A DNA stretch of 64,000 nt from the IMG/VR virus record IMGVR_UViG_3300012988_000001, positions 248,001-312,000 of that record. One strand, written 5' to 3'. The translations under genes and the position numbers were made by a program. This document shows, one piece after another, positions 43,084 through 63,971 of the stretch; the stretch's first letter is position 1; the number at the start of each line of letters is the position of its first letter. The notes under the pieces were generated by a model that saw only the letters and a program-made list of their open reading frames with translations, was not told the DNA's origin and searched no databases.

Positions 43084-43221
43084 GTTCCGAAAAACTTGAG
43101 TACTAAGATTCGTTTATCTTGTCTTCGTATAAGATGTGTATTTTCAGGAAACGTTCGAGTATAATGATTCTAATATTGTCATTATATGAGTACTAACCAC
43201 AATGAAGTACTAGGAACACCA
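43084..43221 (+). ncRNA. CCA-ended tRNA-like stable RNA, about 138 nt
   Basis: GTTCCGA/TAGGAAC-A-CCA; internal hairpins ATCTTGT/ATAAGAT and TATAATGA/TCATTATA. Confidence 0.5.
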
Positions 43222-43227
43222 TATTAA

Positions 43228-43319
43228 TTGCCGGTAGGCTAGAGTCCGATGCCACCCACCTCATAAGTGGATACAGTTAACCAGACACACCGAGGGTTAG
43301 AATCCCTCCCGGCGAACCA
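43228..43319 (+). tRNA. Atypical tRNA, anticodon CAT (Met/Ile2-like), long variable region
   Basis: TTGCCGG/CCGGCGA-A-CCA; CCAC-CTCATAA-GTGG; T-arm GAGGG-TTAGAAT-CCCTC. Confidence 0.65.
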
Positions 43320-43322
43320 TAT

Positions 43323-43350
43323 AAATGCCAGTACTTAAGTACTGGCATTT
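43323..43350. terminator. Perfect 28-bp palindrome, probable bidirectional terminator
   Basis: AAATGCCAGTACTTAAGTACTGGCATTT between a convergent tRNA and HNH gene. Confidence 0.7.
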
Positions 43351-44177
43351 TTTATAGAATCATAGGAATCTACCATAGAAACCAATTCATCATATGTAAT
43401 ACTTGATTGTGTACCTTTTGATTGATTCTCAGAATGTAACATGAGTTCACAATTTAACGGGTGCTTTATATAATAGGGATCATAATTGAATTTTATAGCA
43501 TCTCTAATTGAAACTTTGTGATCTCGTGAAACACCATTTATATTAATATCATTTCCCTTAGTTTTTCTCCACCCATGCTTGTTGAGAAATTCAATATCAA
43601 ACAAATCGGGGTAATGATAAACATTAAAAGTGAATATAAATTTAGCTCTCCCATTTTCGGTGTAACAGTGTTTACAATTATTACAGTATCCAGTTTGCTT
43701 TCTGTATGAACCAACAAAAGAACAATTCTTACATTTACATATAAAGATCTTTTCAAACTCACCAACTTCATCTTTTATTTTTTTAGGATTAGTAGTAGAT
43801 TTATTATATAATCTTTTCGTGGGTGATTTCTTTTTATTTCTTGGTATTTTTGAAACAGATATCGAAATTTTTTGTTTAGTTTCCTCGGTCATTTCCCTGT
43901 TGAAATTACTACAACTTTTACTACAATATTTTTGTGTTGGGAAGTTATAGGTAAAATCTTCCCCACAGTACTCACACTTTTTAAGTTTATTAATTTTTAA
44001 TTTTTTACCTTGACATTTATTAGAACAAAAAGCAGTAGTGCTTCCATTTTTAATACACCTGCGAATTTCTTTCACTTCTCGTGAAATTTCGACTTGACAG
44101 CCATCACATTCTAGTGTTATTCTAGAACGACTTTTTAATGACGAAATATCGTTTAATGTTATATTTGTTAATTTCAT
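43335..44177 (-). CDS. HNH-type homing endonuclease with Zn fingers (only clear minus-strand gene)
   Basis: CDGC, FCSNKC, CEYC, YCSKSC; SRDHKVS...HPLNCELMLHSENQSK; GAGG RBS on the minus strand. Confidence 0.75.
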   Translation of the reverse strand: MKLTNITLNDISSLKSRSRITLECDGCQVEISREVKEIRRCIKNGSTTAFCSNKCQGKKLKINKLKKCEYCGEDFTYNFPTQKYCSKSCSNFNREMTEETKQKISISVSKIPRNKKKSPTKRLYNKSTTNPKKIKDEVGEFEKIFICKCKNCSFVGSYRKQTGYCNNCKHCYTENGRAKFIFTFNVYHYPDLFDIEFLNKHGWRKTKGNDININGVSRDHKVSIRDAIKFNYDPYYIKHPLNCELMLHSENQSKGTQSSITYDELVSMVDSYDSIKNAST

Positions 44178-44205
44178 AATTTATCCTCTGCTAAATCTTT
44201 ATTTA

Positions 44206-44230
44206 GGTTCAAACCGCATGGGGTACACCA
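44206..44230 (+). pseudogene. 3' remnant of a tRNA gene
   Basis: TTCAAAC-CGCAT-GGGGTAC-A-CCA has canonical T-loop/T-stem/acceptor spacing; 5' half absent. Confidence 0.55.
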
Positions 44231-44243
44231 AAACGGAGAAAAA

Positions 44244-44645
44244 ATGAGAAAAAATGATCTAATCAAAATGTTACAAGAGATTGAGGGAAATCCACAGATT
44301 GTGATATGGAATGGTTATGTTGATGACTACATGGACATTGACAAAGGTACTGAGAAGATTACTCTTGTTAAAGAAACTGAAGAATTTCTCTTCAATGCTT
44401 TAAAAGGCCAATGGTGTCAGATGAATAATACTTGGGATATTCCAGAAGAGGAACTTACTAAGCTCGCTGCACATGCCAAAGAGTTACATAAAAACAAAGA
44501 ATATGATTTTGCTAACCCATACGTGACTCCAGAAGAATTCGAGAGTTGGTATGGCAAAAGATCCTTGACAAAGTACGTTCTATCCCCTAAACTACGTGGT
44601 AAAACATCATTAGGCATATATCACAACGCAGATATCAATTACTAG
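44244..44645 (+). CDS. Hypothetical protein
   Basis: GGAG RBS. Confidence 0.7.
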   Translation: MRKNDLIKMLQEIEGNPQIVIWNGYVDDYMDIDKGTEKITLVKETEEFLFNALKGQWCQMNNTWDIPEEELTKLAAHAKELHKNKEYDFANPYVTPEEFESWYGKRSLTKYVLSPKLRGKTSLGIYHNADINY

Positions 44646-44652
44646 GAGATTT

Positions 44653-45288
44653 ATGAACCGTCATAGCTTTACATCCTTTAACATCAAACGTATCGTTGGT
44701 GAAGTGTCCCAAATCCTCGGCTGTCAAGAAGAATTTATTACTTCATCTTTTGACTTCCGTAAGAGTACTGACACTCGTGTTGTAACGCCTGAAGGTACAG
44801 TGTGTACTCGTGTTCGCTACTTCGAGCACTATCAGCAAGACCATGCTACTATTACTCAGCAGCGTACAGAACTTCCTATGTCTGAAGTACTGAAAGAGTG
44901 GATGCAAAATGTCAAGAAGTATCCACCATCCGAAATCTTCTTCCAGCAAACGGGACCGAAGTCAGAGAAAGCTGAGAAACGCTGTAAACTCATCTGTGAG
45001 GACTTATATCTCTTCTCCTTCCCAGAGGGTCAAGAGAATCTTCTAAACGAGCTAGGAGCCGCGTATCGCGAATTTGAGGTACTTACAACTCTGGGCTATG
45101 ATGACTTGAAAGATGGGCGTCTTTTAGAAGTGTCTACTAAACTTCAGTACTACATGCGTGAAGTATGTAATGCTTTGGAAGCAATGCACAAGAAAGACCA
45201 ACTTCTAAACGATTATTACAAGTCTTGGAAAGTTAAGTATCAAGACTTGAGCCGTGAAGTATCTAAACTAACAATGGAGTTTATCTAA
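44653..45288 (+). CDS. Hypothetical protein
   Basis: AGGAG RBS. Confidence 0.7.
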   Translation: MNRHSFTSFNIKRIVGEVSQILGCQEEFITSSFDFRKSTDTRVVTPEGTVCTRVRYFEHYQQDHATITQQRTELPMSEVLKEWMQNVKKYPPSEIFFQQTGPKSEKAEKRCKLICEDLYLFSFPEGQENLLNELGAAYREFEVLTTLGYDDLKDGRLLEVSTKLQYYMREVCNALEAMHKKDQLLNDYYKSWKVKYQDLSREVSKLTMEFI

Positions 45289-45839
45289 TGTCAAATCTAT
45301 TTCGTCCGGGAGCAGTAATCCCTAAAGGTTATACAATTGCAATCACTTCATGGGAAAATGATGGTGATGATTACGATACTATCTATATTAAAGGACTACC
45401 AACCACTGATATTGTGAACGAAGTACTTCATGTACTCAAGTGGTTTGGTCATTGTTCTGATGACATGGGTAATGAAGATATTCAACATGAAGAGATCCTT
45501 GATCGCTTGTGGAATGGTATCGAAGATGGTATTATTACCAAAGATTTTTTCGACCGCTTTATGGGTGATATTGAATTCCCAGTAATCGGTGATGATGAAG
45601 CTCACGATGATTGGCTTGATCGTGTAGCACAAAATGGTGGCTATGAAGACGTGGAAGATATGGTTCGTGGATTCTTGAGCTATCCAATGCAGTACGAATC
45701 TAACTTTGCTCGTATGCTAGAGAGTGTTGTAATCCACCACTTCGAACAAGAGTTCAAAGTACCGGCGATGCCACCAGCACTAACCAAGTTCGATGCTAGT
45801 TGGTCTGAACGTGGTAGTAATACCGTATGGAAAATCTAA
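45288..45839 (+). CDS. Hypothetical protein
   Basis: Coupled ORF; ITSWENDGD. Confidence 0.7.
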   Translation: MSNLFRPGAVIPKGYTIAITSWENDGDDYDTIYIKGLPTTDIVNEVLHVLKWFGHCSDDMGNEDIQHEEILDRLWNGIEDGIITKDFFDRFMGDIEFPVIGDDEAHDDWLDRVAQNGGYEDVEDMVRGFLSYPMQYESNFARMLESVVIHHFEQEFKVPAMPPALTKFDASWSERGSNTVWKI

Positions 45840-46036
45840 CACGTGATGATGTAGAAGAAATCCCGCTTGGATTCTATCTAATCTTTTGGGAAGGTGGTGG
45901 AATGAGTAAAGCTATGATTTCTGTAAACAGAAGGGGTGTTCGTATTATAAATTGTTTAAATTGGCCCGCTAATTCTTACAATGCCCCATTAGTTGATTAC
46001 GTTGACGATATTGAAAAAATGATTTTCATCATGTAA
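45827..46036 (+). CDS. Hypothetical protein
   Basis: Coupled ORF. Confidence 0.55.
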   Translation: MENLTRDDVEEIPLGFYLIFWEGGGMSKAMISVNRRGVRIINCLNWPANSYNAPLVDYVDDIEKMIFIM

Positions 46037-46049
46037 TAGGAGAGTACTC

Positions 46050-46736
46050 ATGAAGTTTATAAAAGAAAATGCTTATATCTTTGTGGGTGCTCTATTAGTA
46101 CTTGCACTTGCAACAATAATTATTAATAGTATCTATGCTGGTTACCAGCAGTACAAGTTAGAAGAGGAACCAAAAATGTATGGTTTGATGTATGTTAGTC
46201 CTGAAGGTGAGAAAGAGTATTACAGAAACACTGACGGGTCCACAACTAAAAATATCGATGACATTGCTATTCTAGCACAGAAGAAAACTGCTGTAGCTAA
46301 AGCAAAAGCATTGCTAAAGTCTGGACACTTAGAAGAAGCTGGTGGGGATATCTACGTTGTTGAGGTAGTTAAGTTAGTACTTAACCCTGAGAAAGTAACT
46401 ATTCCTAAGAAGAAAGAAGGTTACATGATTGAATCAATGGATGCACATAAGTTGACTCCATGTTACTATACTGGTCCAATGAATATGGATTATTACAGTT
46501 CTTACAAATTCAGCGATTGTAAAACTCCCGGCACTGTATTTAAAACTGAAAAGAAAGCACTCGAAGTGATTGAGAGATTTTCAAAATATCTACGTGATAA
46601 GGAACAGCAAGATTTGGCTGATCACCATCGTTATCATCCTAATCGCGTGTATAGTAATCATTTCCCTACCATTGTTGAACGCAATGATTATCTCATTGAA
46701 AACTTCAAGGTGATTAAAACTGATGAGAATGATTGA
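46050..46736 (+). CDS. Membrane-anchored hypothetical protein
   Basis: N-terminal TM; AGGAG RBS. Confidence 0.65.
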   Translation: MKFIKENAYIFVGALLVLALATIIINSIYAGYQQYKLEEEPKMYGLMYVSPEGEKEYYRNTDGSTTKNIDDIAILAQKKTAVAKAKALLKSGHLEEAGGDIYVVEVVKLVLNPEKVTIPKKKEGYMIESMDAHKLTPCYYTGPMNMDYYSSYKFSDCKTPGTVFKTEKKALEVIERFSKYLRDKEQQDLADHHRYHPNRVYSNHFPTIVERNDYLIENFKVIKTDEND

Positions 46737-46944
46737 AGCTATTGCTACCCTATTGACTGCGGTATTCATGGTGTGTATAATGTTGTTCGTGTGCTTCATA
46801 CCACTTATGGTAGTATATGCAAGTGGACTACCCGAATTGGACATGTTCGCACGAATTATGGGTTGTCTTATCTCAATTCCTATGTTAAGATTAACTCTCG
46901 ACGTAATCGACTGGATTTCAGACCTCAAGTACTGGAGAAATTAA
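46723..46944 (+). CDS. Small membrane protein
   Basis: Two TM segments. Confidence 0.55.
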   Translation: MRMIEAIATLLTAVFMVCIMLFVCFIPLMVVYASGLPELDMFARIMGCLISIPMLRLTLDVIDWISDLKYWRN

Positions 46945-46945
46945 A

Positions 46946-47377
46946 ATGCAGAAAGGTGTATCGATTTTCTTTGAAATGCACGAACAGGGTATGCCACATG
47001 TAATTGCTGGCATCTATAGTCCTTCTATGAAAACCGAAGAAGAGATGAAAGCACAGATGGTTGGCTTGATGGGTTATGATCCATTCAATGAACGCTATAA
47101 ACCTGTGTTCATCAACCACACACATTTGTACGCTCATTCCCTACTCGGTAATGAGATTGATAAAGATACTCGTTATACTTTGTCTCGCTTCTTCCCAGTG
47201 GCTTTAGAGCCGCAGAAGCTACCAGTTGACCCGTTCAAGTTCGAACACCGTGACGTGGGTGCGTATGAGTTCATCTCAAATAATCGCTACAGCAAACAAC
47301 TTCGTGAGCATCGTGTTGCTTTACAGAAAGAAGGTGTTGAACGTTATAAAGAAGAACGTGCTCGCAGTAAGGGGTAA
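46946..47377 (+). CDS. Hypothetical protein
   Basis: GGAG RBS. Confidence 0.7.
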   Translation: MQKGVSIFFEMHEQGMPHVIAGIYSPSMKTEEEMKAQMVGLMGYDPFNERYKPVFINHTHLYAHSLLGNEIDKDTRYTLSRFFPVALEPQKLPVDPFKFEHRDVGAYEFISNNRYSKQLREHRVALQKEGVERYKEERARSKG

Positions 47378-47379
47378 GA

Positions 47380-48647: not shown

Positions 48648-48740
48648 AGCGTTGTTTCCAGACGATTAAGTAAACCGGGATGGTACATAACTGGAATCTG
48701 AATAGCTACAGCGGGGGTTCGATTCCCTCCTTCGCTCCCA
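48648..48740 (+). ncRNA. CCA-ended tRNA-like RNA without canonical D or anticodon arms
   Basis: AGCG/CGCT-C-CCA; T-arm GGGGG-TTCGATT-CCCTC; TTCCAG/CTGGAA stem with a large loop. Confidence 0.55.
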
Positions 48741-51577: not shown

Positions 51578-51659
51578 TGGGGAGTGGCAGAGCGGTCGAT
51601 TGCACCAGACTGTAAATCTGGCATACCACGCGTTGGTTCGAATCCAACCTCCCCAACCA
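51578..51659 (+). tRNA. tRNA-Tyr(GTA)
   Basis: TGGGGAG/CTCCCCA; CCAGA-CTGTAAA-TCTGG; CCA. Confidence 0.9.
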
Positions 51660-53870: not shown

Positions 53871-53945
53871 ACTCTATTCGTCTATCGGTTAGGACGTTGG
53901 CCTTTCACGCCAGAAAGAACAGTTCGATTCTGTTATAGAGTACCA
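53871..53945 (+). tRNA. tRNA-Glu(TTC)
   Basis: ACTCTAT/ATAGAGT; loop CTTTCAC; CCA. Confidence 0.9.
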
Positions 53946-53948
53946 CAT

Positions 53949-54034
53949 TTACTGTTAGCTCAGATGGTAGAGCGGTTGTACTGGTGAGACTCCAGACAAA
54001 AGGGACACTGGTTCGATGCCAGTACAGTAAACCA
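53949..54034 (+). tRNA. Non-canonical tRNA with an extended anticodon arm (identity undetermined)
   Basis: Perfect acceptor TTACTGT/ACAGTAA, D-arm, T-arm and CCA; anticodon arm TTGT-A-CTGG-TGAGACT-CCAG-ACAA. Confidence 0.65.
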
Positions 54035-54038
54035 CAAT

Positions 54039-54114
54039 GCGTGATGATAGTTCAGTGTCAGAATATTTCCCTTTAGGATTCGGCAACGGTTAGATTCCGT
54101 TGATTCACGCTCCA
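54039..54114 (+). ncRNA. tRNA-like RNA with a reduced anticodon arm
   Basis: GCGTGA/TCACGC-T-CCA; T-arm AACGG-TTAGATT-CCGTT; TCC-CTTTA-GGA. Confidence 0.55.
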
Positions 54115-54120
54115 AACATG

Positions 54121-54304
54121 TTGGTGTAGATTAATCTGCATGGCAACGGGGAGAAATCCCACTCAGCAGGAGAGCAATGTAACAACTATGGTCGTGGCCG
54201 ATTCCTGCCGACCCGCTTAGTACTCGTAAGGTACTAAACGATTATAAGTACAGAAGTATAAGGGCAGCGGTGTATACCAAATTGACGATACTATTTCTGT
54301 ACTT
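54121..54304 (+). ncRNA. Candidate structured ncRNA
   Basis: TTGGTGTA/TATACCAA, GCAGGA/TCCTGC, TTAGTAC/GTACTAA, AAGTACAGAAGTA/TATTTCTGTACTT. Confidence 0.45.
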
Positions 54305-54313
54305 TCTTTTTAT

Positions 54314-54403
54314 GGTAACAGATAACCAATTCTTGCAGTAATCCAGAGGGAGTGTATGCTGGGAGGGGGATATCTTGGAGTGAAAATCTTCATGTTACCT
54401 GCA
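54314..54403 (+). ncRNA. tRNA-like RNA (acceptor and T-arm only)
   Basis: GGTAACA/TGTTACC stacked on TGGAG-TGAAAAT-CTTCA; ends in TGCA. Confidence 0.45.
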
Positions 54404-54405
54404 TT

Positions 54406-54540
54406 GCGTGACGTTACGTAGAGCACCGAACAGATATCCTAAGTCAGTCTAGAAATACTTAGGAAGGAGTTAGTGTTATCTAGGGTATCATACGAGGTTG
54501 ATCGCTCGTTGGTGTGGTTCGAGTCCACGGTTACGTACCA
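54406..54540 (+). ncRNA. CCA-ended tRNA-like stable RNA, about 135 nt
   Basis: GCGTGAC/GTTACGT-A-CCA; T-arm TGTGG-TTCGAGT-CCACG; TCCTAAGT/ACTTAGGA and ACGAG/CTCGT. Confidence 0.65.
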
Positions 54541-54542
54541 CT

Positions 54543-54690
54543 TAAATCATTTACCTTTAGACTGTAGTTCGAAATGCAGAATATTGGGGTACATAACATC
54601 GCTTAAGGACTTCGTTTAGCGGCGAAGGGGATACGTGCAAGGGTTATGAAGAAAATACCGGGAACGACTGGCTATGCCTTAGATGATTTA
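54543..54690 (+). ncRNA. Candidate structured ncRNA with a T-loop-like hairpin
   Basis: TAAATCATTTA/TAGATGATTTA closing stem; CTGTA-GTTCGAAA-TGCAG; CATAAC/GTTATG. Confidence 0.5.
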
Positions 54691-54713
54691 TTTTTAATTA
54701 AAGGAGTACTGAA

Positions 54714-55106
54714 ATGCTTCATGACTTAATAGAGTTGTATTATTATATTAAGAATCTCGATAAGATTGATAACGCAATATATAGTTGGCGTTTTGAAACA
54801 TGTGGCATATTACATTATCTGGATTTGAAACAGGTAATGAATCCTCACACTGGTGAGATATATCTTGCCATCAAATTATATGTAACATCACAGGATTCAA
54901 ATTTTAAGAGTTCTAGTATTCGAGTTGATCCTAATCGAGTTGTATATAGAGATTCATATGCTCAATTATACACTACCAACCACGAAGGTGCTTTGACTGA
55001 TGAGAATGCAGATTATCTGTTAACTTGTCTCAGTACTGAAGAGGTTAACGCTATTGGTTGCATCTATGATGAAATCAATGCTTTATATAAACGGAGTCGT
55101 GTATGA
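54714..55106 (+). CDS. Hypothetical protein, tandem paralog of 55103
   Basis: MLHDLIELYYYIK...LTDENADYLL..LSTEEV. Confidence 0.7.
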   Translation: MLHDLIELYYYIKNLDKIDNAIYSWRFETCGILHYLDLKQVMNPHTGEIYLAIKLYVTSQDSNFKSSSIRVDPNRVVYRDSYAQLYTTNHEGALTDENADYLLTCLSTEEVNAIGCIYDEINALYKRSRV

Positions 55107-55501
55107 TCCAAGACTTAATTGATGTTTATTATTACATTAAAAGCGTTGATGACCTTCAAGACCTTGAGGGTTGGGCATTTACTGCCGCCACGTCATCCCA
55201 TGCGATAACAATTGTCCCAACGTGGAATGCAACGTATACTGATCGTAAATGGGAAATTAAAATAACCACTGGTAACATAAATGATTATCGGTGGATTTTT
55301 TTGACCAAAAATCAGGTAGAAGTATTCCATTACTGGAAATATCGTTACGCAATATCAATTCCCGGATTAATCACCGAGAATGAATCTGATATGTTGATGA
55401 AATTCATCAGTACTAATGAGATTTCTATTATAAATCAGATCTTACTTGAAATGCGTAAATTAGAGAACAGGAGCGTTCCTTATGAACGAACTAAATCGTA
55501 A
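55103..55501 (+). CDS. Hypothetical protein, tandem paralog of 54714
   Basis: MIQDLIDVYYYIK...ITENESDMLM..ISTNEI. Confidence 0.7.
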   Translation: MIQDLIDVYYYIKSVDDLQDLEGWAFTAATSSHAITIVPTWNATYTDRKWEIKITTGNINDYRWIFLTKNQVEVFHYWKYRYAISIPGLITENESDMLMKFISTNEISIINQILLEMRKLENRSVPYERTKS

Positions 55502-55997
55502 TAGAGATTACTTCAAACTATTGGCTGAAGAGTTTAGCCATGATATGATTGATGTTCTTTCTGATGAACCGTGTTTTACTGTTGACTTTTGGAATGGGGA
55601 AGAGTATGATTTTAACATCATAGACAACCAAAGTTATCTCCGTGACTATTGTCCGAATTTCACAGGTGACGTTCATCTCTTTACAAACAAGATCCATGTA
55701 TGTTATACTCCTGATAACGGCGACATTGAATTGCGTGAGATGTTCCACTTCAATACGTCCGAGTACGGTGTACCGTCCGAGTACTGCAAAGATGAGATTC
55801 ATGATAGTGATGCAAATATTATCATTATCAAGAAAGATACTTTCTGGTACAATGACGAAGAGTACAGAATGGGAAGTACAGAAGAAGAACGTTTCCAACT
55901 TTCCTGTACTGATTTGGGGTACTTCATTGAAGTACTAAATGAAGTGAAACGTTTTATCCTAGAGGATATTGAAGATCATGGAAAACCAGAAGTATAA
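55482..55997 (+). CDS. Hypothetical protein, FQ-motif family
   Basis: STEEERFQLSCTD. Confidence 0.72.
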   Translation: MNELNRNRDYFKLLAEEFSHDMIDVLSDEPCFTVDFWNGEEYDFNIIDNQSYLRDYCPNFTGDVHLFTNKIHVCYTPDNGDIELREMFHFNTSEYGVPSEYCKDEIHDSDANIIIIKKDTFWYNDEEYRMGSTEEERFQLSCTDLGYFIEVLNEVKRFILEDIEDHGKPEV

Positions 55998-56397
55998 AGA
56001 AATGTTTCAAAATATGCTATTTGATGCAGACTTCGAATTCGGCTTTGTAAGCGGTTCTAATTATAAGTTCTTCATCAAGGCGGCTGGCTATCGCATCACT
56101 TGGGATCGTTTGGCACATACTATCGAATTGCCATCCCTTGATGAAGCAGGTTCAGTACGAACGAATGCTAAATCTTCGCATGGCATGACTCCTGCACAAA
56201 TGGTCAACCTATTAAAAGGTCAGTCAACTAAGCAGGAGTACTACATCCCTACTTCACAAGAAGACGAGTTCCAAGCTAGTACTGCTAGGGTTGGTAACAT
56301 ATTACCATTTGTGTTAGTAGAACATCTTGAACGCTTACTTAGTGTTGCACAGGAATGTATTTCTCGGTACTCAATTGATGAGAGGAAGTATAAATGA
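55978..56397 (+). CDS. Hypothetical protein, FQ-motif family
   Basis: TSQEDEFQASTA. Confidence 0.7.
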   Translation: MENQKYKEMFQNMLFDADFEFGFVSGSNYKFFIKAAGYRITWDRLAHTIELPSLDEAGSVRTNAKSSHGMTPAQMVNLLKGQSTKQEYYIPTSQEDEFQASTARVGNILPFVLVEHLERLLSVAQECISRYSIDERKYK

Positions 56398-56654
56398 AAG
56401 ATGCACACGGCATTGAGATTACAGAAGGTTGTACTCTCATGTTCGCACAGCGTGAACCAGACAAATGGAATCCACGTGATATGATTTTCCGTAAAGTAGA
56501 GAAGATTGATCCCGCCTTTGGTGGTCGTATCATCTTTGAAGACAAAAACCAAAATAGCATTGCTTACAAGCAAAACATCACAACTCTCCGTGTAGTATCG
56601 GAAAGTTTTGTAAAGGCTTGGGAAAGTGGTGAATTGTTTATGAGGGAATTCTAA
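56394..56654 (+). CDS. Hypothetical protein
   Basis: GAGG RBS; coupled. Confidence 0.65.
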   Translation: MKDAHGIEITEGCTLMFAQREPDKWNPRDMIFRKVEKIDPAFGGRIIFEDKNQNSIAYKQNITTLRVVSESFVKAWESGELFMREF

Positions 56655-56896
56655 TGAGTAATAAGTACTTTGTACGTTATAGTTACAATGTAACCAACAA
56701 GGTTCCACGTGGTGATGGTCTTGGTTGGGGTTATGAAACTGAACAAGTGACCGATTCTTGTGTATGTGAAATCGATCCAGAGCATATTGATATATCTGAA
56801 GTACGTCATACTGTACTTCGTTATGAACTCAATTATTTGGGTGAACGTAAACCAGATGCATATGATATTGATATTTTAGTACTGAATAAACTATGA
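56654..56896 (+). CDS. Hypothetical protein
   Basis: Coupled ORF. Confidence 0.65.
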   Translation: MSNKYFVRYSYNVTNKVPRGDGLGWGYETEQVTDSCVCEIDPEHIDISEVRHTVLRYELNYLGERKPDAYDIDILVLNKL

Positions 56897-57065
56897 TTAA
56901 CTATATCTTTCGTGTAAGGGGTAAAGGTATTGTTCCCGGATTGACAGTTGTTCGTGCGTACACTGCAACTGATGCTCGTGAAATGCTACTAGCTGAATTC
57001 AGCAAGCCCGAAGACGTTACGATCACTTTGGTTGAATGTAGTCAAGAATTATCGTTTTTAAACTA

Positions 57066-57167
57066 GGACATATTGCGTGATCTGGTTTTATCGTGTAGAA
57101 TGAGGCTAAAATCATTTGTAAATGCGTTAGAAGCGGAGTCGGGGTTGAATTCCCCGAATGTCCACCA
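57066..57167 (+). ncRNA. CCA-ended tRNA-like RNA, about 102 nt
   Basis: GGACAT/ATGTCC-A-CCA; T-arm CGGGG-TTGAATT-CCCCG; no canonical anticodon arm. Confidence 0.6.
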
Positions 57168-57169
57168 CC

Positions 57170-57257
57170 GGGAGAGTGATGGAAAGGCATACATAGGCAT
57201 CTCCAGTGTCTTAGTCTTGATGACAATGCAAGGTTCGAGTCCTTGTCTCTCCCACCA
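57170..57257 (+). tRNA. tRNA with a Leu-type body and an aberrant anticodon loop
   Basis: GGGAGAG/CTCTCCC-A-CCA; Leu-type D-loop and variable arm; GGCAT-CTCCA-GTGTC (5-nt loop). Confidence 0.6.
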
Positions 57258-57264
57258 AACAATA

Positions 57265-57388
57265 ATACCTATCATCTAATATCAGTACTGGTGGCGTGTC
57301 GTCGAGGACGATGGACAGTACTGACAGGATACCTCGTTCGCCAGCAGTGGGTTCGGGGGATGTACGTAAAGTCGTGCTGGGTATGCCA
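57265..57388 (+). ncRNA. CCA-ended tRNA-like stable RNA, about 124 nt
   Basis: ATACCTA/TGGGTAT-G-CCA; GTACG-TAAAGT-CGTGC; TCAGTACTG/CAGTACTGA stem. Confidence 0.55.
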
Positions 57389-57405
57389 AATTATTTAAAA
57401 AACTT

Positions 57406-59528: not shown

Positions 59529-59542
59529 AGTTAGAGCGGTTG

Positions 59543-59692: not shown

Positions 59693-59709
59693 GGGTGGGC
59701 TTACGTCTT

Positions 59710-59785
59710 GCGGTAGTAGCTCAGATGGTAGAGCGGGAGTTTTCCAAACTTCAGGTCTTCGGTTCGAAACCGAATTATCGCTCCA
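59710..59785 (+). tRNA. tRNA-Gly(TCC)
   Basis: GCGGTAG/TTATCGC, U73; GGAGT-TTTCCAA-ACTTC; CCA. Confidence 0.88.
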
Positions 59786-59796
59786 CGAGGTAAAAT

Positions 59797-60345
59797 ATGT
59801 ATAATAAGAAGATAGAAATATCTGGCATTAACAATGGTTACCAATATTTTATTGATTATGAACATCCATTAGCAACCGGAAATTCAGGAAGGGTGTATTT
59901 ACACCGTCACATCGCATCAATTAAAATTAGTCGATGGGTTACTGGTAATGAACATGTTCACCATATTGATGAAAACAAACTTAATAATGATGAAGTTAAT
60001 TTGGAAGTACTATCAGATCTTGAACATCGTCGTTTACATTGGAAAGAAAGAAATAATTTGCCAGATGATTACGAATGGTTTGATTCTGAAATTATTCCAT
60101 GTAATTGGTGCTCAGAATTATTTCAAACGAAATATAAAGATCACATGTATTGTTCTATTAGTTGCGGATCATTAGCACAACCACAAAAATTCCCAATTGA
60201 TAAAGATATATTATCCGAATTGATTTGGAAAATGCCAGCCACTGAGATAGCCAAAATATATGGTTGCTCTGATAAAACCATCGGTAAAAAATGTAACCGA
60301 TATAATATAACCAAACCACCACGCGGTTATTGGTTGCGTAAATAA
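59797..60345 (+). CDS. HNH homing endonuclease with Zn finger and HTH
   Basis: YLHRHIA...HVHHIDENKLNN...NLEVL; CNWC/YCSISC; KPPRGYW. Confidence 0.85.
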   Translation: MYNKKIEISGINNGYQYFIDYEHPLATGNSGRVYLHRHIASIKISRWVTGNEHVHHIDENKLNNDEVNLEVLSDLEHRRLHWKERNNLPDDYEWFDSEIIPCNWCSELFQTKYKDHMYCSISCGSLAQPQKFPIDKDILSELIWKMPATEIAKIYGCSDKTIGKKCNRYNITKPPRGYWLRK

Positions 60346-60358
60346 CAGGAGAATACAA

Positions 60359-60616
60359 ATGAAGTTTTCCAAGATTTTAGAAGAATTACAAGCGTCATGG
60401 AAAAATGGCGTATACGTTGACCTTCCAGAGTACCGCAGTAATGAACGCATTTATGTTCATCGCAGTGGTAAACTCTTCCACGTTAAATCACAATACGGAG
60501 GTCCATTGTGGTGTATTCCAACTGAATTAACCAGCTACGAGAAGGAAGACAGCCGTTGGCAAGTCAACCCACTTCAAAGCAACAAACTACCAGAGAAATT
60601 CTCTGAAGGTTGGTAA
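60359..60616 (+). CDS. Hypothetical protein
   Basis: AGGAG RBS. Confidence 0.65.
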   Translation: MKFSKILEELQASWKNGVYVDLPEYRSNERIYVHRSGKLFHVKSQYGGPLWCIPTELTSYEKEDSRWQVNPLQSNKLPEKFSEGW

Positions 60617-60682
60617 CAGATCTCTCCCGGCAGTGATGATATATTACAAAAGCTGCCATCCCCATAACGTAAGTTATGTTTT

Positions 60683-60716
60683 GCCGATAGTATGATCATC
60701 TACTATCGGCTTTTTT
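60683..60716 (+). terminator. Terminator, preceded by two small hairpins
   Basis: GCCGATAGTA/TACTATCGGC plus T run. Confidence 0.75.
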
Positions 60717-60734
60717 CTTATCTGGAGAAAGAAA

Positions 60735-61223
60735 ATGAACACTAAGAATCTAGCAAAGTACGTAATGCGTAGATGTAAACTATTAAGTACTTTTAATGCT
60801 GACATGTGGAGTAATAAGGTAGATAATAAATTCCATGCTGGACGTGTATTCAACACAGCTAAAATACCAGCAGGAACGGTGCGTCAATCCCTTTATATGA
60901 GTACTGACGGTACTATCTATATGGGAATCCTTGATTGTGATCCGGGATTTGGGAATGATGAAATTGAACTAGATATTGAGTACAATTTCGATACTCGTGT
61001 TATTACCTTAAATTATAATAACATTACTCTTCAAGAAGCATATGAAGACATGGAAGATGATGAAGAAGATTGCTTTACTGTTTCTTATGAACTTACTGAT
61101 TCCGAAGCAGAGTACTTCCAAACTAGCTTAGTTGAAGATCCTATGTTTGAATTTGAAGATGAATTAATGATGATTACATTCTTTGAAACAATTCGTGAAC
61201 GTTTCTATAAGGTTAAATCATGA
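60735..61223 (+). CDS. Hypothetical protein, FQ-motif family
   Basis: DSEAEYFQTSLVED. Confidence 0.75.
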   Translation: MNTKNLAKYVMRRCKLLSTFNADMWSNKVDNKFHAGRVFNTAKIPAGTVRQSLYMSTDGTIYMGILDCDPGFGNDEIELDIEYNFDTRVITLNYNNITLQEAYEDMEDDEEDCFTVSYELTDSEAEYFQTSLVEDPMFEFEDELMMITFFETIRERFYKVKS

Positions 61224-61729
61224 AGAATATTACAACACCAGATCGCAAGGCATTTGATTTGATTATGGGATTTATCGAAGATTACGATTGCTGTAATATG
61301 GCAACGTATGATTCAGTAATACACCACAATAACGCTCTAAACAATGAACAGTACTACAATTCTGAACGTACTGATATGCATTGTTTTAAATCTAGTCTTG
61401 GTAATCATCCATTAGAAGTAACACTAAAATTTGGAACACAGGAAGATATGAGTTTCCTCATCTATCCAAAGAATGAGAATGGTATACGTCTTATCAACTT
61501 CATGTACAATTTTGATGATGCTAATGGTGATGAAGAATGGTATGAGAAGTCAAACCATTGGTGGGCTGATTTTTGTATTGAATTGTATGATACAGAGGAA
61601 GAATACTTCCAAGCTAGTACGGTTGATGATCTACTTCTAACTCCAGAGGAAAACCAAATGTTTATTGATTTCAATAATGCATTTACCCAACATTTGATCA
61701 AACGCATAGGAGAAAAACACTATGGATAA
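61220..61729 (+). CDS. Hypothetical protein, FQ-motif family
   Basis: DTEEEYFQASTVDD. Confidence 0.75.
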   Translation: MKNITTPDRKAFDLIMGFIEDYDCCNMATYDSVIHHNNALNNEQYYNSERTDMHCFKSSLGNHPLEVTLKFGTQEDMSFLIYPKNENGIRLINFMYNFDDANGDEEWYEKSNHWWADFCIELYDTEEEYFQASTVDDLLLTPEENQMFIDFNNAFTQHLIKRIGEKHYG

Positions 61730-61946
61730 TCAACACCGTAAAATTACAGGCTATCGTGAACTAAGTGCAGAAGAGATTGCACTCATGAATGAAGTCAAAG
61801 AAATGAGTGCTCAAGTAGGGCAGTTAATTGAGAAACTACACTCAACCCCAGACGTTGACAAACGCTGGCTAAATATTGCCAAGACAGATTTACAGAAAGG
61901 CTTCATGAGTGCTGTACGCAGCGTTGCAAAGCCTGATTCATTCTAA
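61722..61946 (+). CDS. acb2: Anti-CBASS protein Acb2 (cyclic oligonucleotide sponge)
   Basis: MDNQHRKITGYRELSAEEIALMNEVKE...RWLNIAKTDLQKGFMSAVRSVAKPDSF closely follows the Acb2 sequence pattern (from recall). Confidence 0.85.
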   Translation: MDNQHRKITGYRELSAEEIALMNEVKEMSAQVGQLIEKLHSTPDVDKRWLNIAKTDLQKGFMSAVRSVAKPDSF

Positions 61947-61955
61947 GGATAGAAT

Positions 61956-62636
61956 ATGGACAATTACGAACACACCCCCGGTGGTAAACCTTTTGACGAT
62001 TTAGATGCGTATTTCGATGATGACCATCTATCAGAAGAAGATAAAAAACTACTTGCTGAACTAGATGCGATCGATGTTAATACAGCAGAACTAGCAGTAG
62101 AGTTTACCGACCGTGACCTAGTACATAATAGTATGCTAATGGGTCGTATGGCTAAACTAAAAGGCCACGCTAATAACGTAGACTGTTGCTCTTACACTTA
62201 CGTAATCAACGTATATCAGAAAGACCCCGCCGCAAGTACTTTTAAGTACACTCGTGTATATGAATTCGCTGATAATGTATCCATCTCTCTAATGGAACTA
62301 TTCAGTACTCAAGGTTGTAACTTCATCAAGCGTAGTACCACACAGTGCTTTGGTGCTGATGAACTACATAACCCACACATTGAACTTGAACAACGTGCAG
62401 TTTATGTGTATGATTTAATTGTTCCAGAAGGTTTTGATATTGATGCAACGCATTATCATTACTTCTCTCACATCATTTCGTTTGAACCGTGGGAACAAAT
62501 TGAGGAACATTGGAATTCTGAACTCGAAGATGGTTGGGTTGACAGTCTCCCTGACCACCGCCACCTAGTTCTTCACAGCACGTCACCGCACCAGCTTGAC
62601 ACACGCAGTGCTATCTACATCCGTGACATAAAATAG
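61956..62636 (+). CDS. Hypothetical acidic protein
   Basis: AGGA RBS. Confidence 0.7.
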   Translation: MDNYEHTPGGKPFDDLDAYFDDDHLSEEDKKLLAELDAIDVNTAELAVEFTDRDLVHNSMLMGRMAKLKGHANNVDCCSYTYVINVYQKDPAASTFKYTRVYEFADNVSISLMELFSTQGCNFIKRSTTQCFGADELHNPHIELEQRAVYVYDLIVPEGFDIDATHYHYFSHIISFEPWEQIEEHWNSELEDGWVDSLPDHRHLVLHSTSPHQLDTRSAIYIRDIK

Positions 62637-62695
62637 TTGACACCGAGCCTGTACTGATGTAAAATTGGTACAGGCTTTTTAATTGGAGGATTCCT

Positions 62696-63178
62696 ATGTT
62701 TGTCGAAGCAGCCTTTATGGAGCAACTTGATATGCTCCCAATTCCCACGGACAAGGCACAGGTACGCTTTGATCCACCGGACAGCACTCACTACCGTGAC
62801 GGTCCCGGACACCCTAGCATGTATATCCTGAATGCACCACTGAAGACGTACTTCTATAGTACTGAAACGATGTGCTTCCTATCTCTAGATCTCAATGAAG
62901 AAATATCTTATAACTTCACTTGGTGGTTTGCGGATAATAAATTTGCAGCGAGCCTTGTTGATCTAAATGAATTGTACTGTGAGGACACCGTACCAATTCG
63001 CGATACTATCAAGTTTGGTATATTCCACGATACCGAGGAAGAACATTTCCAAAAGGATTGCCATAAAGGTACTCCACTATCCTGGGATGCTGAACAGTTA
63101 GTACAGAAGAAGTTAACGGCACTAGCTGATTTCTATCTTAACCAGTACTATAACAATTTCCTAGTAAGGAGTGAATGA
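62696..63178 (+). CDS. Hypothetical protein, FQ-motif family
   Basis: DTEEEHFQKDC; GGAGG RBS. Confidence 0.7.
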   Translation: MFVEAAFMEQLDMLPIPTDKAQVRFDPPDSTHYRDGPGHPSMYILNAPLKTYFYSTETMCFLSLDLNEEISYNFTWWFADNKFAASLVDLNELYCEDTVPIRDTIKFGIFHDTEEEHFQKDCHKGTPLSWDAEQLVQKKLTALADFYLNQYYNNFLVRSE

Positions 63179-63600
63179 TGTTTGATTTGCTATCACCTAA
63201 AGTACTTGAGATTACACGCCAGCGTTTATTAGGTCTTTCAAAAACTGAGATCTTTGCAGCACAACCAGAGCTACGTGAAGAACGCAATGAGTTCTTAATG
63301 AACTACGGCGATCAAGGCCGTGCTTATTACTTTGACTTCAACATTGATCTCGAAGATGGTTCGCGTGGTATTGAAGGATGTATCTCTGAAGATACTTTCA
63401 AGTTCACAGAGTACACCAGTAAAGATGAAAAGATCTTCAAGTTGGATATTCGTAAGCTACCATCTAAGATGGGTGAAGATGAATTCTTCCAGTACTCTCT
63501 AGTTACAGACATTGGGGATTTGACAGTAGAGCAGCTTCATGCTATTCTTGTAATCCGTGATATCATCCGTGAAGAAAAAATTGATTGGGGTGTAAAATGA
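63175..63600 (+). CDS. Hypothetical protein, FQ-motif family
   Basis: MGEDEFFQYSLVTD. Confidence 0.75.
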   Translation: MMFDLLSPKVLEITRQRLLGLSKTEIFAAQPELREERNEFLMNYGDQGRAYYFDFNIDLEDGSRGIEGCISEDTFKFTEYTSKDEKIFKLDIRKLPSKMGEDEFFQYSLVTDIGDLTVEQLHAILVIRDIIREEKIDWGVK

Positions 63601-63750
63601 AAGATAAACTAGAGAGCTATTTGTTTGTACTCGTGTTCATTTGGATGTGTCTGAAAGAAACAGTACTTAATACTCCTTGGATGCTTTTTGTACTGGGTAT
63701 CATCGTAGCAACCGGTTTCGCATATTTTGTCGGAATTATTTAAAAAACTT

Positions 63751-63779
63751 GGGACAAAATGAACTTTTTGTCCTATAAT
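63751..63779 (+). promoter_or_regulatory. GGGACA-class promoter with internal inverted repeat
   Basis: GGGACAAAA-TGAACT-TTTTGTCC-TATAAT. Confidence 0.75.
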
Positions 63780-63785
63780 ATAAGT

Positions 63786-63881
63786 ACAGGAAGGGATGGG
63801 TCATCGGGACCGTAGAAAGCGAAGGGTGCAATGAGCGACGGCAATAGATGCATATAGTAGTGGCTTTAGGAACCTTCCTGT
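63786..63881 (+). ncRNA. Promoter-proximal structured RNA candidate
   Basis: ACAGGAAGG/CCTTCCTGT closing stem; no ORF. Confidence 0.45.
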
Positions 63882-63888
63882 GAAATTT

Positions 63889-63971
63889 CGTTGAGTAGCT
63901 TAAGGGAGAGCCGCAGGTAATAACGATAAGGTCACCTGTCAGCGTGGATTAAAACACCACCTCAACAACAC
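63889..63971 (+). ncRNA. Degenerate tRNA-like RNA with an enlarged anticodon loop
   Basis: GTTGAG/CTCAAC; D-arm GCTT/GAGC; GCAGGT-15 nt-ACCTGT; GTGG/CCAC; no CCA. Confidence 0.5.

What the first reader, a model, noticed from the sequence alone, without database searches (positions are those of the whole stretch)
43084..63971. About 11 non-canonical tRNA-like RNAs that keep an acceptor stem and T-arm but rebuild the middle
Besides about 11 normal tRNAs there are elements at 43084, 43228, 48648, 53949, 54039, 54314, 54406, 57066, 57170, 57265 and 63889. Each has a paired acceptor-like stem stacked on a T-arm-like hairpin, and nine end in encoded CCA. Their D and anticodon arms are extended, shrunken or replaced by different structured domains. 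Keeping the processing determinants while the middles differ argues against simple decay. Established precedent: T4 encodes two CCA-ended stable RNAs of unknown function (RNA C and D) in its tRNA cluster. Inference: a tRNA scaffold used to express and stabilise functional RNAs, such as decoys for anticodon nucleases or tRNA-modifying toxins, or aptamer carriers.
Basis: partly seen in the sequence, partly recalled or inferred. Interest (0 to 1): 0.75.

Follow-up and report, generated by a model that had tools for sequence, protein, structure and literature searches.

The report
Conserved tRNA-shaped RNAs in phage tRNA array
A 366-kb jumbo phage carries, among its ordinary tRNA genes, about ten strongly conserved RNAs that keep the tRNA acceptor/T-arm end but have rebuilt middles. 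They resemble the two unexplained stable RNAs of phage T4, and their function is still unknown.

Summary
The observation largely holds. All 11 loci have a terminal stem stacked on a hairpin, and nine carry CCA in register.

- **Conservation:** ten recur in related jumbo phages. They are at least as conserved as the real tRNAs and more conserved than the flanking ORFs (82-100% against about 77% nucleotide identity). One strain shows 3 substitutions in 680 nt of RNA region against 113 in 2,080 nt of ORFs.
- **Compensatory changes:** these are abundant. The e54406 family has 36 of 40 pairs with double changes, and e57265 has 8 such pairs. So these are selected structured RNAs, not decaying pseudogenes.
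- **Corrections:**
  - e43228 is a variant tRNA(CAU) that passes Rfam and sits where sister phages have tRNA-Met.
  - e53949 also passes Rfam but has a hairpin in place of its anticodon loop.
  - e43084 really ends at 43221.
  - e54314 has no support from homologous sequences.
  - e63889 has no CCA.
- **Function:** I found no direct evidence of transcription or processing. The best reading is that the tRNA-maturation machinery releases them as stable tRNA mimics that act in trans. Acting as decoys against tRNA-targeting defences is the leading but untested idea.
- **Closest precedent:** T4 rnaC/rnaD share the layout, but I detected no homology.

The same region also holds three other conserved structured RNAs that are not tRNA-like.

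The parts
43084..43221 (+). e43084: 138-nt element between tRNA-Arg and e43228. It has a terminal stem GUUCC/GGAAC, then A, then CCA, and its last hairpin is AGUACU-11 nt-AGUACU. This is among the weakest tRNA likenesses.
   Evidence: It is 99% and 91% identical in L024 and L026, and absent from sister phages L023 and L027. The outer ACCA is kept in 3 of 3 copies, while the inner ACCA is lost in L026. Only one compensatory pair is seen.
43228..43319 (+). e43228: a variant tRNA(CAU). It has a normal anticodon loop CUCAUAA, an unusual D-arm, and a conserved unpaired A/C-rich 20-nt variable loop. A terminator follows at 43323-43352.
   Evidence: Rfam tRNA 39.8 bits; ARAGORN calls tRNA-Met. L024 and L026 copies are about 71% identical, with 7 predicted pairs spread over all four stems changed compensatorily, while the D loop and variable loop are conserved. 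L023, L027 and Munch carry a canonical tRNA-Met at the same site.
48648..48740 (+). e48648: tRNA-like RNA with a 7-position acceptor stem (two U.U in this phage), a branched single arm in place of the D and anticodon arms, a small variable hairpin, a canonical T-arm (loop UUCGAUU), C73 and CCA.
   Evidence: Five homologs at 77-96% identity, with 9 compensatory pairs. L012 has a perfect 7-bp acceptor stem. CCA is present in 4 of 5. It lies at the end of a transcription unit, just before a TTGGGACA-N17-TATAAT promoter.
53949..54034 (+). e53949: a tRNA body with a Lys-like D-arm and anticodon stem. The 7-nt anticodon loop is replaced by A plus a CUGG-UGAGACU-CCAG hairpin. It starts 3 nt after tRNA-Glu.
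   Evidence: Rfam 40.0 bits; ARAGORN gives an undetermined 4-base anticodon. It is 96% identical in L012, L006 and L013. Pair 3:70 is A-U, G.U, U-A and U.G in the four phages, and one stem pair changes U-A to G-C. CCA is present only here.
54039..54114 (+). e54039: a small cloverleaf-like tRNA mimic with a shrunken anticodon arm, T-loop UUAGAUU, U73 and CCA.
   Evidence: Rfam tRNA 26.7 bits, below the gathering score. It is 99-100% identical in L013 and L006. The divergent L012 copy keeps the acceptor and T stems through compensatory changes while the middle differs.
54115..54313 (+). mid54114: a conserved structured RNA that is not tRNA-like. It has hairpins plus a candidate pseudoknot (CAGGAG with UUCCUG) and ends in a terminator-like hairpin.
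   Evidence: It is 96-99% identical in L013 and L006. Homologs with compensatory hairpin changes occur right after tRNA-Met in Pseudomonas phage 15b and in IMG/VR contig L147. There is no Rfam match.
54314..54403 (+). e54314: 7-bp terminal stem GGUAACA/UGUUACC, an adjacent 5-bp hairpin with loop UGAAAAU, and no CCA. It is strain-specific and is the least supported element.
   Evidence: z = -1.66. Absent from L006 (alignment) and not matched in L013 or L012. No match in the phage database or its own genome. Present unchanged in strain X12.
54406..54540 (+). e54406: a 135-nt tRNA-shaped RNA. It has a 7-bp acceptor stem, no D-arm, a long irregular arm with conserved loop UAGUCUAGAAA, an invariant hairpin AG-GUUGAUCG-CU in the variable-arm position, a T-arm, A73 and CCA.
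   Evidence: Covariance model R1 finds members in 7t3, Munch, L018/L044, L014, L015 and L144. Five distinct fully paired acceptor stems were seen. 36 of 40 pairs have compensatory changes, and 92% of cells are paired against 31-46% for shifted controls. NCCA is kept in all 10 loci extracted (L015 not examined).
54545..54695 (+). post54543: a conserved structured RNA in the 5' UTR of ORF 54714-55106. It is not tRNA-like.
   Evidence: Six homologs with 12 compensatory pairs and two invariant blocks. It always follows the e54406-type RNA and precedes the same ORF.
57066..57167 (+). e57066: a two-armed tRNA mimic. It has acceptor GGACAU/AUGUCC, one long central hairpin with a variable tip, a T-arm (loop UUGAAUU), A73 and CCA. 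It starts at the stop codon of the upstream ORF.
   Evidence: Six homologs including RaK2. The AUGUCC-A-CCA end is invariant, 6 pairs are compensatory (mainly in the T stem), and the central hairpin is truncated in L018.
57170..57257 (+). e57170: a cloverleaf with acceptor GGGAGAG/CUCUCCC, a canonical T-arm, a long variable hairpin, and an anticodon-like loop with C at position 33. It carries A73 and CCA.
   Evidence: ARAGORN calls tRNA-Gly(UCC) with an offset anticodon; Rfam gives only tRNA-Sec at 21 bits. It is 99% identical in L013 and 94% in L018, whose neighbouring protein is 60% identical. All 5 changes are neutral or keep pairing.
57265..57388 (+). e57265: a four-way junction RNA. It has acceptor AUACCUA/UGGGUAU, a long arm with a variable tip, a second arm with an internal loop, and a 5-bp hairpin with loop UAAAGU stacked on the acceptor. 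It ends in N73 and CCA.
   Evidence: Found in L012-L014, K64-1, RaK2 and EJP2 at 81-86% identity. 97.7% of cells are paired against 29-42% for shifted controls, with 8 compensatory pairs. The discriminator is G, U or A while CCA is kept in 6 of 6.
63783..63886 (+). pre63770: a structured leader directly downstream of the promoter at 63751-63779. It is not tRNA-like.
   Evidence: Homologs at 78-93% identity, including 7t3 and two copies upstream of tRNA-Leu in K64-1. The closing stem covaries. In L015 it occurs without e63889.
63890..63966 (+). e63889: a cloverleaf with acceptor GUUGAG/CUCAAC, a D-arm-like hairpin, a 6-bp stem with a 15-nt loop, and a 4-bp stem with a 9-nt loop. It has no CCA. 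It lies 67 nt upstream of tRNA-Leu at 64034.
   Evidence: It is 100% identical in L013 and L018, and 93-95% in Munch, 7t3 and L012. One compensatory change (U-A to C-G) occurs in the T-like stem.

Best explanation
**Shown.** The phage tRNA array holds a set of distinct tRNA-derived structured RNAs with no detectable sequence similarity to one another, all under purifying selection. Each keeps the coaxial acceptor/T-arm minihelix, and most keep N-CCA. The D and anticodon region is replaced by family-specific arms whose loops are invariant in sequence.

**Inferred: how they are made.** The minihelix plus CCA is what RNase P, the 3'-trimming exonucleases and the CCA-adding enzyme recognise. The elements sit head-to-tail with tRNAs, separated by spacers of 1-7 nt. 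They are therefore most likely cut out of the polycistronic tRNA-array transcripts by the tRNA-maturation machinery. They would then accumulate as stable small RNAs, as T4 RNA C and RNA D do.

**Inferred, weaker: what they do.** The rebuilt arms are the functional payload. The RNAs act in trans as tRNA mimics that bind or titrate proteins that recognise tRNA. The leading candidates are host defence effectors directed at tRNA, such as nucleases that cut the anticodon or variable loop, or toxins that modify the acceptor end.

**Exception.** e43228 is a variant tRNA(CAU) that probably still decodes. Its altered D-arm and variable loop may serve to escape such effectors.
For: **Purifying selection**
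- Nucleotide identity to relative L013 is 82-100% for the RNAs, about 77% (median) for ORFs, and 77-96% for canonical tRNAs.
- e63889 is 100% identical and e57170 is 94% identical in L018, whose neighbouring protein is only 60% identical.
- Strain X12 has 3 substitutions in 54034-54714 against 113 in 54714-56793.

**Structure kept by covariation**
- e54406 family: 36 of 40 pairs have double changes, 92.3% of cells are paired against 31-46% for shifted controls, and 0 of 500 shuffles reach this. Five distinct fully paired acceptor stems were seen.
- e57265: 97.7% paired, 8 compensatory pairs.
- e48648 has 9 compensatory pairs, e57066 has 6, and e43228 has 7 predicted pairs changed compensatorily, spread over all four stems.
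- e53949: pair 3:70 occurs in four different states.

**Processing determinants kept**
- N-CCA is invariant in e54406 (all 10 loci extracted), e57066 (6/6), e57265 (6/6, with G, U or A as discriminator), e57170 (3/3) and e43228 (3/3).
- Spacing to neighbours is tRNA-like.
- The elements lie inside transcription units bounded by a repeated promoter and by terminators.

**Context**
- The phage has an ORF for a CCA-adding-type nucleotidyltransferase and one for an Rnl2-type RNA ligase.
- Its tRNA-Tyr has a short unpaired variable region. T5 tRNA-Tyr resists variable-loop cleavage for the same kind of reason (PMC13096335, PMC11555353).
- An Acb2/Tad1-like gene lies at 61722-61946.

**Precedent**
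Against: - There is no direct evidence of transcription, 5'/3' ends, CCA status or stability. The public runs are contigs without strand or end information.
- CCA is not conserved for e53949 and e54039, and is absent from e63889 and e54314.
- The T-loop of e54406 is AUCAUGA or AUCAUAA in three relatives. The e57265, e63889 and e43084 hairpins are not T-loops, so recognition by tRNA enzymes is not assured.
- Nothing ties any element to a defence system, and no binding partner is known.
- All neighbouring ORFs examined lack family assignments, apart from an HNH endonuclease near tRNA-Gly, an Acb2/Tad1-like gene and a DUF1353 gene.
- Several families rest on only 3-6 sequences, some nearly identical.
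- The alignment used for the strongest statistic was fitted to the model, and it includes three ordinary tRNA matches as rows (two distinct sequences).
Confidence: 0.5

Rival explanations
1. The elements act in cis as processing punctuation, like the t-elements of plant mitochondria. They would exist only to direct RNase P and 3'-end cleavage, so defining the ends of flanking mRNAs and tRNAs, and the excised RNA would have no function of its own.
For: - e57066 starts at the stop codon of ORF 56893-57066.
- e54406 is always followed by the structured 5' UTR post54543 and the same ORF.
- e48648 and the e57066-e57265 trio sit at the ends of transcription units.
- tRNA-like t-elements are known to shape mRNA ends (PMC1920247).
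Against: - Punctuation needs only the minihelix. Here the loops and unpaired segments of the rebuilt arms are invariant, for example GUUGAUCG in e54406, the 20-nt variable loop of e43228 and the whole of e63889.
- Several elements stand in tandem (53949/54039, 57066/57170/57265), which is redundant for punctuation.
Confidence: 0.2
2. The elements are non-canonical but chargeable tRNAs. They would be used either in translation or as aminoacyl donors outside the ribosome, as the non-proteinogenic tRNA-Gly of staphylococci are.
For: - e43228 has a canonical CAU anticodon loop, scores 39.8 bits, and sits at the site where sister phages carry tRNA-Met.
- Conserved N-CCA ends fit aminoacylation.
- e57170 is called tRNA-Gly by ARAGORN.
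Against: - Apart from e43228, none has a 7-nt anticodon loop with U33 and a purine at position 37.
- G3:U70 (the alanine identity pair) occurs only in the L012 copy of e53949.
- The discriminator varies within families, which argues against a fixed amino-acid identity.
- Most lack a D-arm.
Confidence: 0.12
3. The elements are decaying tRNA pseudogenes left by turnover of the tRNA array.
For: - The elements come and go between related phages: e54314 is strain-specific, and e57170 and e43084 are present in only some relatives.
- CCA is lost in some copies of e53949 and e54039.
Against: - They are more conserved than ORFs and as conserved as the working tRNAs.
- Changes in stems are overwhelmingly compensatory.
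- Identical rebuilt arms persist across phages whose proteins are 60-87% identical.
Confidence: 0.03

Closest known systems
Phage T4 rnaC (species 1 RNA) and rnaD (species 2 RNA)
   Same: - They are encoded inside a phage tRNA cluster, next to a tRNA.
- rnaC has an imperfect acceptor-like stem (two U.U, as e48648 has), a long arm, a hairpin in the variable-arm position and a canonical T-arm.
- Their function is unknown (PMC3014915, PMC9697503).
   Different: - No sequence or profile homology: model R1 gives no hit on the T4 locus at E <= 1.
- T4 has two such RNAs, while this phage has about ten from distinct families.
- The annotated T4 rnaC gene is not followed by an encoded CCA, whereas most elements here do encode it.
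Engineered tRNA scaffold for expressing recombinant RNA in E. coli (the approach behind PMC3753655)
   Same: In e53949 the anticodon loop of an otherwise complete tRNA body is replaced by an inserted hairpin. This is the design used to make foreign RNAs stable and correctly processed. That description of the engineered design rests on my own knowledge of the method.
   Different: These elements are natural and conserved. In most of them the D-arm is also lost or rebuilt, and what the inserted arms do is unknown.
Variant phage tRNAs that escape or compensate for tRNA-cleaving defences (T5 and T6 tRNA-Tyr against Retron-Eco7 and Septu; PMC11555353, PMC13096335)
   Same: e43228 is a phage tRNA whose non-anticodon parts (D-arm and variable loop) differ from the canonical allele found in sister phages. 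The phage's tRNA-Tyr also has an atypical short variable region.
   Different: No defence system has been linked to it. The other ten elements cannot decode, so they could only act as decoys, not as replacements.
Bacterial Y RNA-like YrlA and the tRNA-like domain of tmRNA
   Same: These are non-decoding RNAs that mimic the acceptor/T-arm part of a tRNA.
   Different: - There is no Rfam match to Y RNA-like families, and only a 13.6-bit, 18-nt match to the tmRNA 3' end at e48648.
- ARAGORN finds no tmRNA.
- The phage has no Ro60/TROVE gene.
- The elements are 75-140 nt long. No tag reading frame was looked for.
t-elements of plant mitochondria (PMC1920247)
   Same: These are tRNA-like structures in polycistronic transcripts that recruit tRNA-processing enzymes.
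   Different: t-elements are conserved in shape only. Here the loops and rebuilt arms are conserved in sequence as well.

Membership tests
Canonical tRNA (Rfam RF00005) | Covariance-model score at or above the gathering score of 29 bits | tested here: inconclusive
   Met by e43228 (39.8 bits) and e53949 (40.0 bits) once laxer filters were used. Not met by e54039 (26.7 bits) or e57170 (tRNA-Sec model, 21 bits). No tRNA match for the other seven.
Canonical tRNA (Rfam RF00005) | A 5-bp anticodon stem closing a 7-nt loop with U33 and a purine at position 37 | tested here: not met
   Met only by e43228 (CUCAUAA). e53949 has a 4+4-bp stem with loop UGAGACU. e57170 has C33. e63889 has a 15-nt loop. 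e54406, e57066, e48648, e57265, e43084 and e54314 have no such arm.
T4 rnaC/rnaD-type stable RNAs of phage tRNA clusters | Encoded within a phage tRNA gene cluster and carrying a tRNA-like acceptor/T-arm end | tested here: met
   This is a likeness of kind, because the group has no formal definition.
T4 rnaC/rnaD-type stable RNAs of phage tRNA clusters | Sequence or profile homology to T4 rnaC or rnaD | tested here: not met
   Model R1 (e54406 family) has no match in the T4 locus L022 at E <= 1. The blastn searches of several elements (53940-54560, 57060-57400, 54300-54410) and a megablast of 43000-64000 against the phage database returned no T4-like record. The other families were not modelled.
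T4 rnaC/rnaD-type stable RNAs of phage tRNA clusters | Accumulates as a discrete stable RNA in infected cells | not testable with these tools
   Only assembled contigs of public runs were available, with no read ends or strand.
tmRNA | A tRNA-like domain together with a tag reading frame and pseudoknots, detectable by ARAGORN or Rfam | tested here: not met
   ARAGORN finds none. Rfam gives only a 13.6-bit match to model positions 346-363 at 48712-48729.
Y RNA-like (YrlA) with Ro60 | An Rfam Y RNA-like match together with a Ro60/TROVE partner gene | tested here: not met
   No Rfam match at E <= 5. There is no TROVE gene in the phage genome. A Ro60 supplied by the host cannot be excluded.

The most novel reading that the evidence does not exclude
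Jumbo phages of this clade use the tRNA minihelix as a natural, modular expression scaffold. Each rebuilt arm would be an aptamer-like module that captures a particular effector of host immunity that binds tRNA. The array would then be an RNA-based anti-defence battery, evolving by cassette gain and loss alongside the real tRNAs.
Probability: 0.18. Interest if true: 0.85.

Novelty: new variant of a known kind. Interest (0 to 1): 0.62.

Why it matters
T4 RNA C and RNA D have been unexplained for about fifty years. This clade offers roughly ten such RNAs per genome, from distinct families, with clear covariation, invariant loops, and natural gain-and-loss variants among close relatives. That makes the old question testable by genetics, through deletions and swaps between sister phages.

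None of these families is in Rfam, so they are missed or mis-annotated as tiny ORFs, as in K64-1. If they turn out to be tRNA mimics that blunt tRNA-targeting immunity, they would form a new RNA-based class of counter-defence. If they are only processing signals, they still explain how these phages punctuate long early transcripts.

Tried and rejected
- **Protein-anchored search in IMG/VR:** The search for related loci with ORF 55482-55997 found nothing.
- **Motif scan for e54406:** the 14-mer GAGGTTGATCGCTC gave 118 hits in IMG/VR, almost all chance. Only L044 and L144 are real members.
- **Motif scan for mid54114:** a 16-mer gave 17 hits, of which one is real (L147).
- **Scans for more relatives of e57170 and e53949:** nothing new was found. 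One of these patterns was mistakenly written from the L012 variant.
- **Read laying on four public runs:** these gave strain variants but no read ends or strand, so nothing on transcription or processing.
- **Model R1:** it did not reach T4, K64-1, RaK2 or GAP32-like loci.
- **Y RNA/Ro60 idea:** dropped, because there is no TROVE gene and no Rfam hit.
- **tmRNA idea for e48648:** dropped.
- **PA5oct ncRNAs:** the highly expressed ncRNA001 and ncRNA002 of this related jumbo phage (PMC7318152) are not tRNA-like.
- **Neighbouring ORFs:** Pfam scans gave no functional lead.
- **Amber-suppressor reading:** the CUA inside the e54406 loop was considered and rejected. The loop has 12 nt, and the ORFs in the region read as open frames under the standard bacterial code.
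- **16S rRNA likeness:** a resemblance of the e54406 loop to the 3' end of 16S rRNA, recalled from memory, was judged too short to mean anything.

Full report
**Source and setting**

The window is bases 248001-312000 of a 366,160-bp phage genome with direct terminal repeats, recovered from a soil metagenome. Its nearest named relatives are only distantly alike at the DNA level. They are Salmonella phages Munch and 7t3, Klebsiella phage fENko-Kae01 and, further off, the RaK2/K64-1 group. Gene order around the tRNA array is shared with Munch and 7t3.

**Checking the observation**

Rfam at gathering score gives 11 canonical tRNAs in the window, and a twelfth lies just beyond its end. ARAGORN adds three odd calls:
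- 43228: Met, 92 nt
- 53949: a four-base "anticodon"
- 57172: Gly, with the anticodon out of place

With laxer filters Rfam scores e53949 at 40.0 bits and e43228 at 39.8 bits, both above the gathering score of 29. It scores e54039 at 26.7 bits, and e57170 only at 21 bits on the tRNA-Sec model.

Folding shows a terminal stem stacked on a hairpin in all 11 loci. My strict scan required 7/7 acceptor pairs, an adjacent 5-bp stem and NCCA. It recovers e43228, e53949, e54406, e57170 and e57265 together with 12 canonical tRNAs. Elsewhere in the 366 kb it gives only 2 AT-rich hits on the + strand and 5 on the - strand.

**Relatives and conservation**

Neighbouring proteins led to a graded series of related contigs: L006, L012-L015, L018, L023, L024, L026 and L027. 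Ten of the 11 elements recur in them.

| Feature compared with L013 | Nucleotide identity |
|---|---|
| ORFs | 61-97%, median about 77% |
| Canonical tRNAs | 77-96% |
| The RNA elements | 82-100% |

Two further comparisons point the same way:
- In L018 the adjacent protein is 60% identical, yet e63889 is 100% and e57170 is 94% identical.
- One natural strain (run X12) has 3 substitutions in 54034-54714 against 113 in 54714-56793.

This excludes neutral decay.

**Structure, family by family**

- **e54406.** Four close copies already give 40 pairs, 13 of them with compensatory changes.
  - A covariance model built from these copies finds full-length members in 7t3, Munch, L018/L044, L014, L015 and L144. 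It finds none in T4, K64-1 or GAP32-like loci.
  - On the resulting alignment 92.3% of cells pair, against 31-46% when partners are slid. 36 of 40 pairs show double changes, and no shuffle out of 500 reaches this. The caveats are that the alignment is fitted to the model and contains three ordinary tRNA matches as rows (two distinct sequences).
  - Five distinct, fully paired 7-bp acceptor stems were seen.
  - The hairpin AG-GUUGAUCG-CU before the T-arm, and the N-CCA end, are kept in all 10 loci extracted.
- **e57265** is a four-way junction. 97.7% of cells pair against 29-42% for slid controls, with 8 compensatory pairs. The discriminator is G, U or A while CCA never changes.
- **e57066** keeps GGACAU/AUGUCC-A-CCA in six phages including RaK2. 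Its T stem takes four forms, and its central hairpin has a variable tip.
- **e48648** has a 7-position acceptor stem that is perfect in L012, a canonical T-arm, and 9 compensatory pairs.
- **e53949** is a tRNA whose anticodon loop is replaced by a hairpin. Pair 3:70 occurs as A-U, G.U, U-A and U.G, and one stem pair switches from U-A to G-C.
- **e54039** keeps its acceptor and T stems in the divergent L012 copy, while the middle differs.
- **e57170** has only three near-identical copies, and none of their changes is disruptive.
- **e63889** is a cloverleaf with a 15-nt loop and no CCA.

- **e43084** ends at 43221 (GUUCC/GGAAC + A + CCA). The inner ACCA is not conserved.
- **e43084 and e43228 travel together as a cassette.** L024 and L026 have it, while L023 (which carries the identical neighbouring protein), L027 and Munch have a plain tRNA-Met instead.
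- **e43228 is therefore a variant tRNA(CAU).** Seven predicted pairs, spread over all four stems, differ compensatorily from the L024 copy. The anticodon loop CUCAUAA, the D loop and an unpaired A/C-rich 20-nt variable loop are conserved.
- **e54314** has no homolog beyond one near-identical strain and a weak folding score. It remains a candidate only.

**How it probably works**

Three things are shown: these are selected, structured, tRNA-derived RNAs; the minihelix and usually N-CCA are the conserved common denominator; and the rebuilt arms carry invariant loops.

The next step is inferred. Tight head-to-tail spacing with tRNAs and placement inside units bounded by a repeated TTGGGACA-N17-TATAAT promoter and terminators suggest excision by RNase P and 3' trimming. 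The RNAs would then accumulate as stable species, as T4 RNA C and D do (PMC3014915, PMC9697503).

The function in trans is inference only. The supporting context is:
- a CCA-adding-type enzyme and an Rnl2-type RNA ligase in the phage;
- a tRNA-Tyr with a short unpaired variable loop, set against published defences that cleave the variable loop (PMC13096335, PMC11555353);
- an Acb2/Tad1-like gene nearby.

I could obtain no transcription or processing evidence.

**Comparison with known systems**

T4 rnaC has the same layout but no detectable homology. tmRNA, Y RNA/Ro60 and ordinary tRNA membership each fail on a defining feature for most elements. None of the families is in Rfam.

I rate this a new variant of a known kind. 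The known kind is the tRNA-like stable RNA of a phage tRNA cluster. What is new is the number, diversity and comparative support.

**Other conserved RNAs found in the same region**

- **mid54114** is a pseudoknot candidate. It is shared with Pseudomonas phage 15b, where it follows tRNA-Met, and with one IMG/VR contig.
- **post54543** is a structured 5' UTR with 12 compensatory pairs.
- **pre63770** is a structured leader upstream of e63889 and tRNA-Leu.

Noticed in passing
window 54115-54313; L011 2461-2573; L147: A conserved RNA that is not tRNA-like follows e54039 directly. Homologs lie right after tRNA-Met in Pseudomonas phage 15b and in a 46-kb IMG/VR contig. Three hairpins change compensatorily, and the invariant CAGGAG could pair with the invariant UUCCUG of a hairpin loop to form a pseudoknot. 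In this phage it ends in a terminator-like hairpin. No Rfam match.
   Followed up: partly
window 54545-54695: The 5' UTR of ORF 54714-55106 is a conserved structured RNA with 12 compensatory pairs and two invariant blocks. In six phages it always follows the e54406-type RNA. It may be a riboswitch or regulatory leader.
   Followed up: partly
window 63783-63886; L001 6893-6965 and 7572-7664: A structured leader lies directly downstream of a promoter and upstream of e63889 and tRNA-Leu. It is conserved in 7t3 and L015, and occurs in two copies upstream of tRNA-Leu in K64-1.
   Followed up: partly
L006 9310-9419; L013 6862-6971; run X12 at window 54027/54034: Some relatives carry an extra structured insert of about 108 nt between e53949 and e54039. 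It removes the CCA of e53949. This may be yet another RNA cassette.
   Followed up: no
whole genome G000: The palindrome AGTACT occurs 910 times against 121 expected from base composition, and CAGTACTG occurs 91 times against 4.4. Both are spread evenly along the genome. The motif appears in many hairpin stems of these RNAs and just after ribosome-binding sites.
   Followed up: partly
window 48759, 50418, 50788, 57406, 63751: A repeated promoter-like motif, (AAAAAC)TTGGGACA-N17-TATAAT, marks the starts of transcription units. It is conserved in relatives at the 63751 site.
   Followed up: partly
window 51578-51659: The phage tRNA-Tyr has a short unpaired variable region (CAUACCACGC) instead of the long variable arm typical of bacterial tRNA-Tyr. 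This recalls T5 tRNA-Tyr, which resists defences that cleave the variable loop.
   Followed up: no
window 61722-61946: A 74-aa ORF carries a precomputed Pfam hit to the Acb2/Tad1 hairpin (anti-CBASS/Thoeris sponge family). It is conserved in L012, L013, L015 and L018.
   Followed up: no
window 43335-44177 (- strand): A 280-aa ORF on the opposite strand lies between the e43228 terminator and ORF 44244. It is absent from relatives L023, L024, L026 and L027 and has no Pfam match. It may be a recent insertion.
   Followed up: partly
window 59797-60345: An HNH endonuclease gene (HNH_3, 29 bits) lies directly after tRNA-Gly. This recalls the homing endonucleases associated with phage tRNA clusters, such as SegB.
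   Followed up: no
L001 11150-11280 and 12159-12232 (K64-1): The K64-1 tRNA region is annotated with many ORFs of 20-30 codons, but it contains further tRNA-like pieces. Examples are a GGAAGG...CCUUCC-A-CCA element and a 23-bit tRNA-like match next to the e57265 homolog.
   Followed up: no
L019 11629-11750: A GAP32-like jumbo phage contig has a 122-nt element with a perfect 7-bp acceptor stem, a canonical T-arm and ACCA. tRNA-shaped RNAs with enlarged middles may therefore be widespread in this supergroup.
   Followed up: no
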